Source: Octopus bimaculoides (lineage: Eukaryota). From it: a DNA stretch of 64,000 bases. This document shows positions 31,746 through 62,654 of the stretch, in pieces (the stretch's first letter is position 1; the number at the start of each line of letters is the position of its first letter). Below the pieces are notes generated by a model that ran no database searches, was not told where the DNA came from, and saw only the letters and a program-made list of their open reading frames with translations. The translations under genes and the position numbers were made by a program. The stretch covers positions 46,605,235-46,669,234 of the forward strand of contig NC_068998.1 of the NCBI RefSeq assembly GCF_001194135.2. Reading direction: 5' to 3'.

Positions 31746-31972
31746 AACAGAATAATACTGGAACTTCTTGGACTTGAGTTAAGAAATTGTCCTACCTGGT
31801 CAGGAGTTGACTAATACCATGAGTATGTGTGTGTCTGTGTGTATTTGTATGTATATATATATACATATGTACAGGTAGGTTATAAAACGATGCCATTCCA
31901 GTTTGTCTGACTAATTTTTTCCCTCTTCTTTTGACGATTTTATTAATTTCTTTTTCTCTTTTATTCCAACAG

Positions 31973-32238
31973 CATCCATTGACTTGAAGAAATTCCACAA
32001 GGACTCGCCACCATTCGATGCAAAACATGGCTACGAATGCAACCTGTTCACTGTTGAAAGCCGTCCCTGTTCTGTTAAGGATCTGTATTCTACAGCAGAC
32101 ATCTCTCCGTCTGAAGGACTTAGTGCATTGGATGGTATTCGTAAGGATGGCTGGAGTGGGTCGACGATGTTTAAACTCTGGCCAGTTGCTAATAAAGACA
32201 TCAGTATTTCAACTCCAGATTTCAACTCATCCAGAAAG
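31973..32238 (+). CDS. NHSL1: NHS-family / GUK-holder-like protein, exon encoding the C-terminal half of the WAVE homology domain
   Basis: Polypyrimidine tract + AG at 31971-72 (phase 1) and AAG|GTAACA donor (phase 0). The peptide ECNLFTVESRPCSVKDLYSTAD...LSALDGIRKDG aligns with the recalled NHS QxNxFxxxTRPxCVxxLH and WAVE QQLFDRKTLPIPLQETY...YRDDG segments. Phase matches the next exon. The symbol denotes the family; an invertebrate gene would be co-orthologous to NHS/NHSL1-3 and Drosophila gukh. Confidence 0.85.
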
Positions 32239-32284: not shown

Positions 32285-33614
32285 GTTGAGTGAGAGACCA
32301 GTGCATGCCATCAAAGTGACACTAGGGTAAAATATACGAAGCTTAATATACCCACCATGACTATCCCAGACACATGCATCACAACCAAATGTGCGGGACA
32401 TGGTGATCTCATTTCAAGATAAAGAGCGCATTAATTTGTGGGTCGGGCCTAGTTGGAATTTTTTTCAGGTTGAGTTGCCCATCCCACTCAAAAAGTCCCT
32501 GAATAAGGGTTGTTTAAGGATGTTGAACGAAACACCCATGTTTCCAAAGGTGAATTATTCAAACCCCAAAGAATTCCTCTCAACGCATGGCTATGATGCT
32601 CCCCCACTACTTCTGCTTGTGGTCAGAGATGCACATATCATCAGCTGCTAAGGGACATACTCAACTGGTGAAGGTCAAGCAACTGACAAGCAATGGCTGT
32701 AGCCCATCTTTTTATACTAGGGCAAAATACGTACATGATATTGATGGCGATATTCACCCATTGCTTCGTTCTGAGTTGAAACTCTACTGAAGTCAACTAT
32801 GCCTCTCGTCCTTTTGGGGTCGATAAAATAAATACCAGTGAAACACTGCGGTCGATATAATCCACTAGTCTCCTCCCCACCAAATTTCAGGCCTTGTGCC
32901 TTTAGTAGAAAGGATTATTATTATTATTATTATTATTATTATTTGGAGAGACAATTCCGGGTTTACCAACAGTTATTTCTGTTGCTGGACTGAAGATCCT
33001 GTGAAAGATTCTGTGAAAATTTGTCCCTCTTGTGTTTTTACTTGTATTTGTCCATATATACATATATGTATATGTCTTTATGTGTGTATATATATGTGTG
33101 TGTGTGTGTGTGTATACACACACACACACTGAGATACACGTGTGTGTGTGTGTGTGTGTGTATTTGCATATTTGCTATACATGTCATTTATACTGGGTTA
33201 TATTTTCAGTGGTATTCTTACGAGAATGTCAGGTGTGTCCGTAAATGGCGACCGCCTCTACCAATTCAGGTTAGTTTGACTGCAACCTCCCCCCCCCCCC
33301 CCCCCTCCCCACGTGTACATACACACAGCATGTAACCCTTGCCGCTTATCTGTTGTAGAAATGTTGTGTCCCCTCATTTAGATTCAAAAATATTAATTCC
33401 CTTACAAATTCATGTCGCAGATACAACTCTTTAAGCTTTGGCTGTGTACCGGATCTTGTTGTGGTTTTGTTGTGTTACCTGTATCAAACATACTCCAAGT
33501 AATATGTTTGCAGTGCCTTGTAGTGCTGTTCTGTATGTGTGTGTATATAAGCCCCTGGGGTCGTGGCTGTGTATTTGTCTGCATGTTTTTTAATCATTTC
33601 GAAAGACCCCTGTT

Positions 33615-34636: not shown

Positions 34637-34777
34637 TTAACATAATGTGTTCAAATTTGCTGACTTACACTGGAATTTCCGTAGGTCCTGCTAGTTCATT
34701 ATTAACTTTTGGTGGTTCCTAGTGGTTGGGTAGAGGCTTTGATTTTGTGCAGCAATGAAGAATTCAAGGCTTTACTG

Positions 34778-34876
34778 ACAGCATCTAGTTTACTGAGTGG
34801 TTACCCACCTAACTACTAACTTGGCTTGACATTGCTTATCTTCAGTGACCGGACAAGAACCGATGCCTTCAATGTG
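34778..34876 (-). pseudogene. Degenerate 5S rRNA-derived sequence (5S pseudogene or SINE3 head)
   Basis: Manual ungapped alignment of 34797-34876 to the reverse complement of the recalled metazoan 5S rRNA gives about 55/80 matches, including internal control region segments (tactaac, tgctta-cttc). Similarity extends to about 34778. Confidence 0.65.
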
Positions 34877-35146
34877 ATTCCCAGTTTTCTTTTATTGCTG
34901 TTGTTTTTGCTGTTGTCAAATGAGCCATTGTTTTTTTGTCATAATTCTGTGTGGTACTTTGTACTTTGTCACTCTAATCTCTCTTTTCATCTGTCATCTA
35001 TATAACAAAATATATTATCGCTATTATTATTTTCCTTCTTTCCATTTTGTTTTCATTTCTTGCTGAATGTCTTCCTGACACCTAGGGCAAAGAAACTCAC
35101 TATATACATTGATAGGCCATTAAAATAAATACTATTATTATTATTA

Positions 35147-58472: not shown

Positions 58473-58603
58473 TAATACACAAGATATACATTGATGGTAG
58501 AGCACAAATGTGTTGCTGTAATTGTTGTTCATAGAGCAAGTTTCTAGAATTTTCTCATCTGAATCTTTTGTTTGTATTAATTATTTTTCTTATTCTTTTT
58601 CAG

Positions 58604-60025
58604 ACGTTTCAGTGACACGGCAGAATGTGGTGGAGATGAAATGAGCACATTTACAGGGGAAACCAGTGATCGAGACTCATTAAACACAGAATTGTTCAAA
58701 CTCGATGCTCTCGTGCATCGACGGAATCTGATGGCACGAACCTTTAACCCTGACAACACGTCGTCCAGCAGTGTTGAGTCCAGCAACTTTTACCCTAAGA
58801 CAGATATGTCGTTTTATGATCCTGATATGGTGCTGTCTTGCAGACAATTCAAACAAGATGATGAGGTGTCATCACTGTACTCTCTCGATGAAGATGGTTT
58901 CTACACATCATTCCACAGTGACAGTGGCTTGAAGGCAATGAGAACCATGTCTAAAAATAGAATGTCAGAACTGTCAGAGATCTATTCCAAGTTCATAGGT
59001 AGATCGAAACGCCAGACATTCAGCGAAGCAACAGACAGGAATCACATTATGGAAGATATATGTGACCAGGAACTGGAAGCAGAAATGAGAGAGGAACGAG
59101 ATCAAACGCCAACAAGGGAGATGAACCCACCACGTCGCCTTTCTAGCCCAACAGAGAGTGAAACCAGTGACTCAACACTTACCAATACTTCCAATAGGAA
59201 TTCTTTGGTCACTGGCGCCAGTGAATCAAATTACTCAGAGTCTGACCATGAGATTATCTACAAACATATAAAGAACATGACTGTTATTTCTCCGAAATCT
59301 TTTCCTTCCTGGTGCATTGTTTCATCATCTGGGAGTGATGAAGATTCTTCAAATCAGCTTCATGTTGGTCAGAAAACAGGAAGTGATAGTTCCTCGTCAG
59401 GCAGCAGTCTTGTTGCCGAAGCCACTGCTTCAGACACAAAAGATTCCGATGATGGAGGGAACACGCTTCCTCGAAATTATTTAGCATCTGAGAAATGGAA
59501 CGTGAACCAAGACAAAACAGGATCTTGGCCACGGACCCATAATAGTTCCAATGATGGCAAGAAACAAGGCATTTTGAAATCTTCATTCCGCAAAGATTCT
59601 AGTTCCAAAGCAAAGATGCCAAAGTCTCTGAATTTCTCTCCATATGTCAACATGCTTCCAGCCGATGATCTTCAGACTCAGCAGTGTCTCTTGTCTGATC
59701 TTTCTGTTACAAATAAGCATTATTCTTCATTGCCAGAACACAATTCTTTCACATCTACATCTTCCGCATCTTCTACATCCAGTAGCACAACTATTTGTAA
59801 CGATGACACTAGTACTGTTGTAACAATGTCTGATAGTGACTTTGACTTTCTTCCAAGATATCCGGCACCGGTATCCAGCACAGCTCATCAGAAATGTTTC
59901 ACTATTGAAAGGGAACCCAGCACTAATGCCATCCATAATGAGACTTTGGTTTCATGCCAGAAGAACAATTCTTTAGAACCTCTAACAAACTCTGTCATTA
60001 TTCGAAAACCTCTGGCTCAGCTTGC

Positions 60026-60063
<38 letters not shown>

Positions 60064-61709
60064 TTCAATTTGGTGCTGTTAATGAAGAGATCAATGTGAA
60101 TGCAATCATGCATAGCAACTCCAGTTTGAAGCAGCAACTCCCATCACCTGATTTGAGTCCACCATCAACTCCTTATGCCGTGTCCTTCATTCCAAATGCT
60201 TTCACATCCTTTCCCAGTGCCAAAGACCACGTTTCCCAGAATTCCACGTCTTTTGCTTTCAATAAACCTGATTTGCAAAAGTTACCAGTCAGTGAAACTG
60301 TGGTTATTAACACTAATAATAATAATAATAATAATAATAATGATAATAGTAATAGCAACAACAGCAGCCAAAACAACAACAACAACAACATTGGTTTAAC
60401 TGTGGAAAATAGTAGCAAAAGATTATCGTTTTCTACATTTACCATACCGCCATCGGGTCAGGAAGCCAGTGAGAAGACAAGTCCTACCGATAATATACTT
60501 GCTGGGAACTTCAGCAAAAAACTTAATTTGCTGCCAGATACAAACCAATCTGACTCAGTTTCCGATCACTCAAAGCCAGAATCCAGTGATTCCAGCAGCA
60601 AGTATAACCCTAGGAATGGTTCCTATCGTGTTGCCATGTACGAACAGCCTGAGGAAGAGCCGAAACGGTTGGATTCTTACAGACTGGCCATTTCAGCATC
60701 CAATAAACTAACCGATGACCCAGTCACCCGGAATGGTTCTTATCGTGTCGCAGTACAAGACATCAATCAGAACAACAACAACAGCAACAATATAGAACCT
60801 ACCAGCAGGTCTGATTCTTATCGTGTTGCCATGAAGGTGGAAGCGAGTGATCGGCGCAGTAAATCACTCAGTAAAGATATTCGTAGACAAGGCATTACTG
60901 ACATCAATCAATTGAAGATGGATGGTAACCAGCAGTATGATAATTTTATAAGTTCTCCTGTACAAAAGTCTACAAGTTTCAGATCAAAGATGACTAGTGT
61001 GTTTGGTGGTAGCAAACCTGATTCTCAGCTCTTAACCAAACCACAAAACTCAAAGAAAAAATATCCAAAAGGCAACACTTATTTGTCTGAAAGTACTTCT
61101 CTGTCCACCTTGAAGAATTTGGGCAAAAAATCATCATCTTTGCCAAACCAAAGTACTGATCTACATACTTTCAAAAAACTTGTCTCTCAACAAACTCCAT
61201 CGTCATCTCCAAAAACCTCAGCTGTTGAAGTATTGAAGCGAAAACCTTCACCTCCTTTCTCTAAAGACGTATCGTCAGAAAGTGGTAACAGAAGTATTCT
61301 TGGAGGGTTGTTCCAGAGACCGTCATCATGGGGTGGAACCAGTAAAGTAAATCCCAAGATGTCAACTTACGTCAGTTTTGACACAATCTTTGAAGACAAA
61401 GAAATCCTCTCCAATGCCTCTTCGATAGAATCGCTGAGGTCACCTTCTCTCACATCAATTAAAAAAATTGGTGACCCAAGCAACTTACACACGGTCAAAT
61501 TTAACCATGGGTTAAAAGCTGATCGCAAATCTTTGCTGGAAGTAAATAAACATCTGTCGGAAGAGGAGAAGAGAAATCGAAAGAAGCGTTTGGCAGGTAC
61601 TGTAGATGAAAAAGCCGTCCAGTCGGTGCTGGACAGTATCAAGACAACCATAAAATCTATGACTTCAAGGTCAGACTCCTCTTATAAACAACATTCTTCA
61701 GCAACTTGA
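58604..61709 (+). CDS. NHSL1: NHS-family / GUK-holder-like protein, giant 3106-nt exon (apparently terminal)
   Basis: Acceptor ttctttttcag|A (phase 2, giving EYR-RFSD), in frame with the 1022-aa ORF 58641-61709. Contains SLYSLDEDGFYTSFHSDSGL (58872-58931), matching the recalled NHS/NHSL/Gukh S-x-Y-S-x-D-x-x-G-Y-Y-T-S-M-H-x-D-x-G-L motif. S/N-rich disordered composition. Confidence 0.93.
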
Positions 61710-62654
61710 TGTGTTTAAGAATCCAGGTTTTTAAAAAAAATTTTTTTCTGTCCTGAAAGAAAGATCTAAAGAAGATCTTAGTTCCTTCTAATGAAGGCCT
61801 AACGGGAATAATTTCTTCATTAAAAGAAGAAACTAGAGAGGTATTTCTATGGTAAAGACACATCTAGAAAGATCCAAAGACGGTTTGTTTTTCTTCTTGC
61901 TCCATTGTTTGTTGCTTCCAGAAAGAAAGATCTTTCCAGAAGATGTGCTCCCCCGTCTGCCCACCTCCCTCTTCATTAACCTGTCGTGCATGTCTTTTAA
62001 CAATCGCCGCCACCTTTACCACCATCACTCTCATCGTCACTGCCACTATCACCATCCTCATCCCTATCATCATCATCATAATCATCATCTCAAATTTGAT
62101 TCAGTCTCGGTGCTGAATTCAAAGAATAGCCAAAATACCGTCCCACTCCATCCTGTCTTTGATCCACCCAGAGTGACAATATTTTCACAATAGTGAAGAC
62201 TCACTCTTTTATTTGAGTCATTGAAGACCCTACAATCAATGTGGGCTCCTGGTGAGCAAATTCATTGATATGGTTTCAATTCTCACTTGAAGCACAACGT
62301 TCTTTTTTTTTTTTGAGTTCATTAATGTCATTTAATGCTCTTAGGCAGGGCATGAGCACCTCATAATCTTCTTTCCCTCTGTAAACCCAAAGCTCTTGTA
62401 ACCTATAATATATAACAGAACCAATGCTTTACATATCATTTCTGCTCTCTCTCCCTGAATTCTGTGCACTGGGGTTGCAGTTTTTGTTTGGGGCAAATTC
62501 ACTTCTCTTCCACTAACACTCTTAGGGAAAAGCATGAACATCACAAGTCTAGCAGCATTCCTTCTCTCTGTCTATCATTGTCCATTTGATAAAAGGGAAA
62601 CAAAACACATTAAGTCTCTGAGCTTTAGCTAAAATGAAGATGAAACAAGTAAAA

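What the first reader, a model, noticed from the sequence alone, without database searches (positions are those of the whole stretch)
60612..60833. Four SAPAP/GKAP-type phospho-GK-binding repeats in an NHS/GUK-holder protein
Seen: RNGSYRVAM (60612-38), RLDSYRLAI (60666-92), RNGSYRVAV (60729-55) and RSDSYRVAM (60807-33), separated by unrelated spacers. The copies differ largely at synonymous positions (tcc/tct, gtt/gtc, tat cgt vs tac aga), which suggests selection on the peptide. Established: DLG/PSD-95 guanylate-kinase domains bind phospho-Ser peptides, and the tandem SAPAP/GKAP repeats have the consensus R-x-x-pS-Y-x-x-A-hydrophobic. Drosophila GUK-holder, an NHS-family protein, was named for binding the Dlg GK domain. 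Inference: this protein uses a SAPAP-like multivalent, kinase-switched array to cluster Dlg, coupling a WHD-containing WAVE-complex subunit to the MAGUK scaffold. That would be a convergent or ancestral form of the postsynaptic SAPAP mechanism. I am not aware of this motif array being described in NHS-family proteins, but cannot check.
Basis: partly seen in the sequence, partly recalled or inferred. Interest (0 to 1): 0.8.

Follow-up and report, generated by a model that had tools for sequence, protein, structure and literature searches.

The report
Dlg-binding motif array in GUK-holder protein
The last exon of a cephalopod NHS/GUK-holder gene encodes four conserved copies of the short peptide that MAGUK guanylate-kinase domains bind when it is phosphorylated, which probably explains how this protein family holds on to Discs-large.

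Summary
Four R-x-x-S-Y-R-x-A-[MIV] peptides lie at exactly the stated coordinates, in one frame of a 3.1-kb terminal coding exon. Composition predicts 0.001 such matches per protein.

The gene belongs to the NHS/GUK-holder family. A spliced conserved segment from the window hits Pfam NHS at 42 bits against a cutoff of 27. The Argonauta orthologue has a WAVE-homology N-terminus.

The repeats sit in a segment predicted to be disordered. Their non-synonymous divergence is three to four times lower than in the spacers. Every full-length mollusc-type relative recovered has 2–5 copies, and about 25 pancrustacean orthologues have a single copy, R-[SN]-x-S-Y-R-[LM]-A-N.

The conserved positions match the published specificity of DLG and MAGI GK domains, R-Φ-x-pS-Y-X-X-A-Ψ. 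In Drosophila, the Dlg-GK-binding fragment of GukH is its C-terminal 296 residues.

The best explanation is a phospho-switched, multivalent docking array for Dlg/MAGI GK domains. Binding, the kinase and Dlg clustering are all untested. No searchable paper describes this motif in GukH or NHS proteins.

I class it as a new member of a known kind of motif, of moderate interest. The near-invariant Arg at +2 remains unexplained.

The parts
58604..61709 (+). Terminal coding exon of the NHS/GUK-holder-like gene. It has a polypyrimidine tract and AG acceptor at 58600-58603 and a TGA stop at 61707-61709.
   Evidence: The frame is open from 58581 to 61709 and the acceptor was read. It is collinear with Argonauta hians LOC115219682 residues 646-1715 (tblastn). 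dN/dS between two decapodiform orthologues is about 0.18.
60612..60638 (+). Repeat 1, RNGSYRVAM. It fits R-Phi-x-S-Y-X-X-A-Psi fully.
   Evidence: The orthologous column is invariant in 8 mollusc sequences.
60666..60692 (+). Repeat 2, RLDSYRLAI. It fits the consensus except for Leu at -2, which is fixed in all cephalopods seen.
   Evidence: AlphaFold2 draws residues DSYRLAISA as a short helix.
60729..60755 (+). Repeat 3, RNGSYRVAV. It fits fully and lies 21 residues after repeat 2, a spacing conserved across molluscs.
60807..60833 (+). Repeat 4, RSDSYRVAM. It fits fully. At this position it is present in cephalopods and absent or degenerate in gastropods.
60876..60917 (+). Conserved motif DIRRQGITDINQLK just downstream of the array, of unknown function.
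   Evidence: D, RR, GITD and QL are invariant in 8 mollusc sequences. The motif lies 25-46 residues after the last repeat, and 34-38 in most.
58869..58931 (+). NHS-family signature block SSLYSLDEDGFYTSFHSDSGL.
   Evidence: Pfam PF15273 at 27.8 bits on a 66-aa piece, and 42 bits on the spliced 362-aa segment. The block is invariant across the family.
61362..61394 (+). Conserved block STYVSFDTIFE.
   Evidence: The invariant columns are S908, T909, Y910, F913, D914, I916, F917 and E918.
61608..61664 (+). C-terminal conserved helix DEKAVQSVLDSIKTTIKSM, the only confidently modelled element of the tail.
   Evidence: AlphaFold2 helix at residues 343-361 of the 375-aa segment, with pLDDT 77-81. The helix is conserved.
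31972..32238 (+). Upstream coding exon corresponding to Argonauta residues 138-226, the distal part of the WHD-like region. Boundaries are approximate.
   Evidence: tblastn at 90% identity. WAVE1 similarity spans orthologue residues 75-200.
33207..33269 (+). Small upstream coding exon (approximate boundaries).
   Evidence: tblastn.
43636..44685 (+). Large upstream coding exon that ends in the conserved ...KYDFPWESLPKDWTTSVRLREISKRRKEERQSSSG block. Boundaries are approximate.
   Evidence: tblastn at 81% identity. It forms part of the segment that hits Pfam NHS.
50040..50198 (+). Upstream coding exon (approximate boundaries).
   Evidence: tblastn at 89% identity.

Best explanation
The four peptides are short linear motifs in the disordered C-terminal tail of a cephalopod NHS/GUK-holder protein. 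[quoted passage not shown]

Proposed mechanism: a basophilic Ser/Thr kinase that reads Arg at -3 phosphorylates the central Ser. The peptide then binds as a short helix. The phosphate sits in the former GMP-phosphate site of the GK domain, Arg(-3) makes a fixed contact, and Tyr(+1) and Ala(+4) insert into the hydrophobic groove.

Four sites on one chain would let one molecule hold several Dlg molecules, or bind one with high avidity. Dephosphorylation would release them. This would tether the WAVE-homology N-terminus of the same protein to the Dlg/Scribble cortex.

Shown here: the motifs exist, are far beyond chance, lie in a coding and selectively constrained exon, belong to an NHS/Gukh family protein, are conserved in molluscs and pancrustaceans, and match the published GK specificity rule position by position.

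Inferred: binding itself, its dependence on phosphorylation, the kinase, the partner's identity, and any multivalent clustering.
For: 1. Motif match. The published specificity for MAGI2 PDZ0-GK, stated there to apply to PSD-95 GK as well, is as follows: Arg only at -3; Arg/Lys/Asn/Ser/Ala at -2; anything at -1; Tyr at +1 (Phe is 10-fold worse, Trp abolishes binding); anything but Pro at +2 and +3; Ala only at +4 (Val is 285-fold worse); hydrophobic or small polar, including Asn, at +5 (PMC10171801). I collected 144 distinct family repeat instances by matching R..SY..A and examined the positions that the search pattern does not fix. Position -2 is N/S/A/T/R in 139 of 144. Positions +2 and +3 never carry Pro. 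Position +5 is V/M/T/I/L/N/A/S/C in 143 of 144.

2. The family is already a GK ligand. [quoted passage not shown] In insect orthologues the single motif lies about 70-340 residues from the C-terminus.

3. Conservation. There are 2-5 copies in cephalopods, gastropods and bivalves (Argopecten, Mytilus). There is one copy in Hermetia, Glossina, a firefly, a damselfly and an ostracod. dN in the repeats is 0.032, against 0.10-0.11 in the flanks.

4. Context is right for a linear motif. The tail has mean pLDDT 47, and repeat 2 is drawn as a short helix.

5. Chance is excluded.

6. Family assignment: Pfam NHS at 42 bits, and a WHD in the orthologue.
Against: - There is no binding, phosphorylation or expression data for any of these proteins.
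- I could not retrieve D. melanogaster GukH itself, so the motif's presence inside residues 749-1044 is extrapolated from other flies.
- Earlier GukH-GK pull-downs may have used bacterially made, unphosphorylated GukH. This is my recollection and I could not check it. If so, either phosphate is not required or another element binds.
- Arg at +2 is nearly invariant (137 of 144), which GK binding does not explain.
- Repeat 2 has Leu at -2, and Val at that position lowered affinity in the published assay.
- Ticks, the annelid Owenia and many unnamed 'TSMH-type' relatives lack the motif. The vertebrate-derived Pfam NHS model does not cover this region. A published search of the human proteome with this motif did not list NHS proteins.
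Confidence: 0.7

Rival explanations
1. The repeats are phosphorylation sites read by a different phospho-reader, such as 14-3-3, or are simply regulatory sites for a basophilic kinase. They would have no direct role in MAGUK GK binding.
For: R-x-x-S is the core of many basophilic kinase and 14-3-3 motifs, and repeat 4 begins R-S-x-S. The near-invariant Arg at +2 is not required by GK domains and hints at another reader. In arthropods the motif is preceded by [ILV]-K, which resembles PKD/CaMK/AMPK-family sites.
Against: 14-3-3 mode I and II motifs favour Pro at +2, where these repeats have Arg. Nothing in 14-3-3 or kinase consensus motifs requires both Tyr at +1 and Ala at +4, yet these are the two residues that insert into the GK groove. 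The host family is a documented GK ligand.
Confidence: 0.12
2. The array binds a GK domain without phosphorylation, as MAP1A and KIF13B do. The frequent Asp at -1 or other acidic neighbours would substitute for phosphate, so there is no kinase switch.
For: Asp occupies -1 in 65 of 119 mollusc-type repeat instances. Unphosphorylated GK ligands exist, for example the DLG4 GK complexes with MAP1A and KIF13B listed in PMC6989407. GukH fragments have been used in pull-downs without deliberate phosphorylation.
Against: The Ser is invariant. If it did not matter it would drift, or be replaced by Asp or Glu, in at least some of the 144 instances; however, the collecting pattern fixed Ser, so variants with another residue there could not have been seen. 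For SAPAP peptides of the same consensus, binding depends on phosphate. The GukH fragment in PMC5706957 was purified from HEK293T cells, where it could have been phosphorylated.
Confidence: 0.1
3. The repeats are a lineage-specific low-complexity or duplication feature whose resemblance to the GK-binding consensus is coincidental. Their real role would be structural or related to the adjacent RRxGITD motif.
For: The exon is rich in low-complexity sequence such as poly-Asn and Ser runs. The last two repeats keep a fixed 21-22 residue spacing and a fixed distance to RRxGITD, which could indicate a composite element with another function.
Against: The probability of the pattern by composition is about 1e-6 per position. 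The pattern is conserved between molluscs and arthropods while the spacers diverge freely. The tolerated substitutions track the GK specificity table.
Confidence: 0.05

Closest known systems
SAPAP/GKAP (DLGAP1-4) GK-binding repeats (GBRs; the '14-amino-acid repeats')
   Same: Both have several copies of R-x-x-S-Y-x-x-A-[hydrophobic or small polar] in a disordered region. In SAPAP these bind the DLG/PSD-95 and MAGI GK domains only when the Ser is phosphorylated (PMC10171801; PMC9740047). The multivalent layout is also shared.
   Different: The host proteins are not homologous. No GKAP/GH1 domain appears in any Pfam scan. Here the array lies near the C-terminus of a WHD-containing NHS-family protein, whereas in SAPAP it is N-terminal. 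Arg at +2 is nearly invariant here but is a free position in the published rule. Binding has not been tested.
Drosophila GUK-holder (GukH), an NHS-family protein
   Same: It belongs to the same protein family (Pfam NHS, WHD). GukH is an established Dlg GK ligand whose binding fragment is the C-terminal 296 residues (PMC5706957). Dipteran and other insect orthologues carry one copy of the same motif near a T[DE]IW C-terminus.
   Different: Insects have one copy and molluscs have 2-5. No accessible paper defines the GukH-GK contact at motif level. I could not obtain the D. melanogaster sequence itself. The octopod protein lacks the C-terminal PDZ ligand.
SGEF (ARHGEF26), Ephexin4, ARHGAP21/23 and LL5A: single-GBR partners of MAGI2/DLG GK domains
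   Same: Each has a single consensus GBR in a disordered segment, in SGEF and Ephexin4 together with a PDZ-binding motif, so that GK-GBR and PDZ-PBM contacts cooperate (PMC10171801 discussion; PMC6683736). The insect Gukh isoform, with one motif plus a T[DE]IW C-terminus, has the same layout.
   Different: These are vertebrate Rho-regulator families with no WHD. PMC6683736 itself notes that the SGEF and GukH ternary complexes with Scribble and Dlg arose independently.
Phospho-LGN/Pins and phospho-Lgl peptides bound to DLG GK
   Same: The phosphate site on the GK domain is the same, and so is the Arg at -3.
   Different: The downstream sequences differ and lack the Y(+1)/A(+4) pair. Each has a single site phosphorylated by Aurora A or aPKC.

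Membership tests
NHS / GUK-holder protein family (Pfam PF15273) | Significant match to the Pfam NHS model | tested here: met
   The conceptually spliced 362-aa segment from the window's exons scores 42 bits, E 4.6e-11, against a cutoff of 27, covering model positions 456-637. The 66-aa GFYTSFHSDSGL block alone scores 27.8 bits. Full-length scans gave nothing, probably because the low-complexity sequence triggers HMMER's bias filters. Relatives P0043 and P0079 also hit NHS.
NHS / GUK-holder protein family (Pfam PF15273) | [quoted passage not shown] | tested here: inconclusive
   Residues 75-200 of the Argonauta orthologue match WAVE1 residues 28-147 in PDB 3P8C with E 4.4e-5. In the window only the distal part is present, at 31972-32238. 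The exon for orthologue residues 1-137 is not found and presumably lies upstream of the window or in an assembly gap.
NHS / GUK-holder protein family (Pfam PF15273) | Physical binding to the Dlg GK domain (the property that named GukH) | not testable with these tools
   Known only for Drosophila GukH 749-1044 (PMC5706957) and, by co-immunoprecipitation, for zebrafish Nhsl1b with PSD95 (PMC3119310).
NHS / GUK-holder protein family (Pfam PF15273) | C-terminal PDZ-binding motif (the Scribble PDZ1 ligand in GukH) | tested here: not met
   The window protein and the Argonauta protein end in ...SSAT, which has no hydrophobic last residue. Squids end in ETGV, bivalves in RFS[MQ]V, and insects in T[DE]IW or ETAL. 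This feature varies within the family, so its absence does not exclude membership.
SAPAP-type GK-binding repeat (GBR) motif class | Sequence consensus R-Phi-x-S-Y-X-X-A-Psi (Phi = R/K/N/S/A-like; X is not Pro; Psi = hydrophobic or small polar) | tested here: met
   Repeats 1, 3 and 4 fit at every position. Repeat 2 fits except for Leu at -2. The family-wide residue table agrees with the rule.
SAPAP-type GK-binding repeat (GBR) motif class | Motif lies outside folded domains and is conserved among orthologues (the filters used in PMC10171801) | tested here: met
   The AlphaFold2 tail has mean pLDDT 47, with the repeat region below 50. The motif is conserved in cephalopods, gastropods, bivalves and pancrustaceans and is under stronger purifying selection than its flanks.
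SAPAP-type GK-binding repeat (GBR) motif class | Phospho-Ser-dependent binding to a DLG or MAGI GK domain | not testable with these tools
   This needs calorimetry, fluorescence polarisation or pull-down with phospho- and non-phospho-peptides.
SAPAP/DLGAP protein family (homology) | GKAP homology (GH1) domain, or overall sequence homology to DLGAP1-4 | tested here: not met
   No GKAP-family Pfam hit appears on the window exon, its tail or its orthologues. The protein works like SAPAP at the motif level but is not a SAPAP.
14-3-3 mode I/II binding motif | R-S-x-pS-x-P or R-x-Phi-x-pS-x-P, with Pro at +2 | tested here: not met
   Position +2 is Arg in all four repeats and in 137 of 144 family instances, and is never Pro.

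The most novel reading that the evidence does not exclude
R-x-x-S-Y-R-x-A is the ancestral Dlg-GK docking element of protostome GUK-holder proteins, and is therefore the molecular basis of an interaction known since 2002 but never mapped to a motif. Molluscs expanded it to 3-5 copies around a core pair with fixed 21-22-residue spacing. This created a phosphorylation-tunable multivalent scaffold that can cluster Dlg/MAGI, possibly as condensates, directly on a WAVE-complex subunit. The invariant Arg(+2), which known GK rules do not explain, marks an additional reader or a dedicated kinase.
Probability: 0.35. Interest if true: 0.6.

Novelty: new member of a known kind. Interest (0 to 1): 0.45.

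Why it matters
GUK-holder was named for binding the Dlg GK domain. It links Dlg to Scribble at synapses and is needed for spindle orientation, yet the accessible literature does not say which residues make the contact or whether it is regulated on the GukH side.

A conserved SAPAP-type motif gives a precise, cheap hypothesis to test. One Ser/Tyr/Ala triplet in flies, and four in cephalopods, should control the interaction, and a kinase should switch it. Such a kinase would add a second switch to the known aPKC-controlled opening of Dlg SH3-GK.

The finding also shows that the GBR mechanism described for the vertebrate postsynaptic density is used in invertebrate polarity and actin machinery. 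It adds a family-wide set of natural sequence variants for defining GK specificity. It does not change the known principle of how GK domains read phospho-peptides.

Tried and rejected
1. Full-length Pfam scans of the exon and of four orthologues returned no NHS hit, and seven more relatives also returned none. I traced this to the low-complexity content, because short conserved segments do hit.

2. The second and third word-indexed homology searches (the C-terminal profile A1 and the 47-aa signature profile A4) returned only 2 and 5 proteins. They gave no named Drosophila or vertebrate sequence.

3. Three cluster look-ups named Argopecten, Mytilus, Ixodes, Hetaerina, Owenia, Abscondita, Hermetia, Cyprideis and Glossina, but not D. 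melanogaster.

4. A PDB sequence search with the 88-aa array found nothing relevant. GBR peptides in PDB entries are shorter than 20 residues and so are not indexed.

5. The tail (array, RRxGITD motif and C-terminal helix) has no Pfam match. I therefore could not place the array on the vertebrate NHS model.

6. DNA for the Argonauta locus could not be fetched because the gene spans 118 kb. I used two decapodiform loci instead.

7. The original GukH papers are not held: Mathew 2002, Qian and Prehoda 2006, Marcette 2009, Caria 2018 and Zhu 2011.

8. Searching the literature for the literal peptide strings found nothing relevant.

9. I considered 14-3-3 sites and coincidental low complexity, and rejected both as the main explanation (see the rival explanations).
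Full report
**Observation.** On the + strand, the frame of the long ORF 58641..61709 reads RNGSYRVAM (60612-60638), RLDSYRLAI (60666-60692), RNGSYRVAV (60729-60755) and RSDSYRVAM (60807-60833). No other match to R..SY..A[MIVL] exists in any of the six frames of the window. From the amino-acid composition of the exon, 0.0012 matches are expected. Of 20,000 shuffles, 21 had one match and none had more.

**Gene context.**
- The repeats lie in a terminal coding exon. A polypyrimidine tract and AG acceptor end at 58603, the exon starts at 58604, and the stop is at 61707-61709.
- tblastn with the closest relative, Argonauta hians LOC115219682 (P0001, 1715 aa), places further exons at about 31972-32238, 33207-33269, 43636-44685 and 50040-50198. 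All are on the + strand and collinear.
- The exon for the first 137 residues of the orthologue is not in the window.
- The window contains many assembly gaps.

**Family.**
- Full-length Pfam scans gave nothing.
- When only the conserved part is scanned, the conceptually spliced 362-aa segment hits Pfam NHS (PF15273) at 42 bits, E 4.6e-11, against a cutoff of 27. The 66-aa block around GFYTSFHSDSGL hits at 27.8 bits.
- A HMMER profile of the exon, searched against 1.84 billion representative proteins, found 192 relatives. Among them a tick and a damselfly protein carry Pfam NHS in the matched region. Short fragments consisting of the signature block alone are pre-annotated PF15273.
- Residues 75-200 of the Argonauta N-terminus match the WAVE1 WAVE-homology domain in PDB 3P8C, E 4.4e-5.
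The literature treats Drosophila GukH as the single fly member of this family (PMC3119310; PMC4252473).

**Evidence that the exon is coding and the repeats are constrained.** Between two decapodiform orthologous loci (L001, L002), dN/dS is 0.032/0.47 in the 36 repeat codons, 0.104/0.74 in the spacers and 0.110/0.63 in the rest of the exon. Between the window and either decapodiform, dN is 0.15 in the repeats and 0.53-0.65 elsewhere. In an alignment of eight mollusc sequences, R, S, Y, R and A of repeats 1-3 are invariant columns while the spacers are not alignable.

**Distribution of the motif**.
- Cephalopods have four copies.
- Gastropods (Pomacea, Lymnaea, Biomphalaria and others) have two or three.
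- Bivalves (Argopecten, Mytilus) and unnamed relatives have four or five.
- About 25 pancrustacean orthologues carry exactly one copy, R-[SNT]-x-S-Y-R-[LMIK]-A-N, usually preceded by [ILV]-K. Most end in a T[DE]IW C-terminus, about 70-340 residues downstream of the motif. Named examples are the flies Hermetia illucens and Glossina palpalis, the firefly Abscondita, the damselfly Hetaerina and the ostracod Cyprideis.
- Arthropod isoforms ending in ETAL mostly lack the motif.
- Ticks, the annelid Owenia and many unnamed relatives whose signature block reads ...YTSMH... lack it altogether.
- In every mollusc array the last two repeats are 21-22 residues apart in most cases (range 17-26). The last repeat is followed 34-38 residues later, in most cases, by an invariant RR[MQ]GITDxxQ motif. 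Cephalopods have an extra repeat inside that gap.

**Comparison with known GK ligands.** Zhang, Zhu and colleagues showed that SAPAP GK-binding repeats with the motif R-x-x-S-Y-x-x-A bind DLG GK domains only when phosphorylated. They then mapped the specificity by mutagenesis (PMC10171801):
- Arg is obligatory at -3.
- Arg/Lys/Asn/Ser/Ala are accepted at -2, while Pro, Gly, Glu and Val are poor.
- Any residue is accepted at -1.
- Tyr is required at +1. Phe is ten-fold worse and Trp is dead.
- Anything but Pro is accepted at +2 and +3.
- Ala only is accepted at +4. Val is 285-fold worse, and Ser and Gly are poor.
- Hydrophobic or small polar residues, including Asn, are accepted at +5.
- PSD-95 GK bound the new partners (pEphexin4, pSGEF, pARHGAP23, pLL5A) as effectively as MAGI2 PDZ0-GK.

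Repeats 1, 3 and 4 of the window satisfy every position. Repeat 2 has Leu at -2. I collected 144 distinct family instances by matching R..SY..A and examined the positions the pattern does not fix. Position -2 is N/S/A/T/R in 139. Positions +2 and +3 never carry Pro. Position +5 is V/M/T/I/L in molluscs and Asn in arthropods. The pattern of what is fixed and what is free therefore mirrors the GK binding pocket.

The region is predicted to be disordered, with mean pLDDT 47. Repeat 2 is drawn as a short helix, the conformation GBR peptides adopt on GK.

**Link to the named interaction.** GukH is an established ligand of the Dlg GK domain. The fragment used for binding is residues 749-1044, the C-terminal end, purified from HEK293T cells. 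The interaction is gated by the SH3-GK autoinhibition of Dlg, which aPKC relieves (PMC5706957). The position of the single insect motif near the C-terminus is consistent with that fragment. I could not retrieve the D. melanogaster sequence to confirm this.

**Best explanation (confidence 0.7).** The array is a set of phospho-switched docking sites for the GK domain of Dlg, and possibly MAGI. It is multivalent in molluscs and monovalent in insects. It would tether a WAVE-homology protein to the Dlg/Scribble cortex. The steps shown and the steps inferred are listed under Best explanation.

**Rival explanations.**
- Another phospho-reader or pure kinase sites (0.12).
- Phosphate-independent GK binding (0.10).
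- Coincidental low complexity (0.05).

**Unexplained.**
- Arg at +2 is present in 137 of 144 instances although that position is solvent-exposed in the published complexes.
- Leu at -2 of repeat 2 is fixed in cephalopods.

**Novelty.** Six literature searches, and reading of the main GukH, NHS and GK-domain papers that are held, found no description of this motif in GukH or NHS proteins. The 2023 human-proteome search with the same consensus lists SAPAPs, Ephexin4, SGEF, ARHGAP21/23, FRMD4A, INCENP, LL5A and PROX1, but no NHS protein. Key subscription papers could not be read, so prior description cannot be excluded. The mechanism and the interaction are both known. What appears new is the motif that connects them and its multiplication in molluscs. 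I therefore class it as a new member of a known kind, with moderate interest (0.45).

- The exon encoding the first part of the WHD is not in the window.
- 'Largely synonymous' differences between copies is an overstatement.
- The octopod C-terminus (...SSAT) lacks the PDZ ligand that squid, bivalve and insect orthologues have.
- The species attribution was not verified.

Noticed in passing
window 34773-34885, minus strand: There is a full-length match to 5S ribosomal RNA (Rfam RF00001, 51.8 bits, gathering score 38) inside an intron of the NHS/Gukh-like gene. It could be a dispersed 5S gene, a pseudogene or a 5S-derived repeat.
   Followed up: no
window 60026-60063 and 60314-60354, + strand: Perfect or near-perfect (AAT)n microsatellites lie in frame within the coding exon and encode poly-Asn runs. 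The Argonauta orthologue has different low-complexity sequence at these places, so the tracts are evolutionarily labile.
   Followed up: partly
window 60876-60917 (DIRRQGITDINQLK); relatives P0001-P0051: An invariant D-x-R-R-x-G-I-T-D-x-x-Q-L motif follows the last repeat at a nearly fixed distance in all mollusc-type relatives. The last two repeats keep a 21-22-residue spacing. This suggests a composite element, and the function of RRxGITD is unknown.
   Followed up: partly
relatives (for example P0038-P0048, P0052 against P0001-P0037, P0065-P0154): The family splits by its signature block. The G[FY]YTSFH type (molluscs and pancrustaceans) carries R..SYR.A. The G[FY]YTSMH type (ticks, the annelid Owenia and many unnamed sequences) never does. 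This could reflect two paralogue lineages or repeated loss.
   Followed up: partly
window 61680-61709 (C-terminus ...SYKQHSSAT*); relatives: The octopod proteins end without a PDZ-binding motif. Squids end in ETGV, bivalves in RFS[MQ]V, and insects in T[DE]IW or ETAL. In arthropods the ETAL and T[DE]IW endings look like alternative 3' exons, and mostly only the T[DE]IW form carries the GK-type motif.
   Followed up: partly
window 61849-62193, + strand (3' of the stop codon): A 114-aa ORF with a His-rich run (HHHSHRHCHYHHPHPYHHHHNHH) comes from CAT/CAC-rich simple sequence in the presumed 3' UTR. It is most likely not a gene.
   Followed up: no
whole-protein Pfam scans (against 76): hmmscan reported no NHS domain on full-length, Ser/Asn-rich family members, but did report it when only the conserved segment was supplied. 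The 'uncharacterized', 'mucin-17' and 'serine-rich adhesin' names on many orthologues in public databases probably stem from the same masking.
   Followed up: yes
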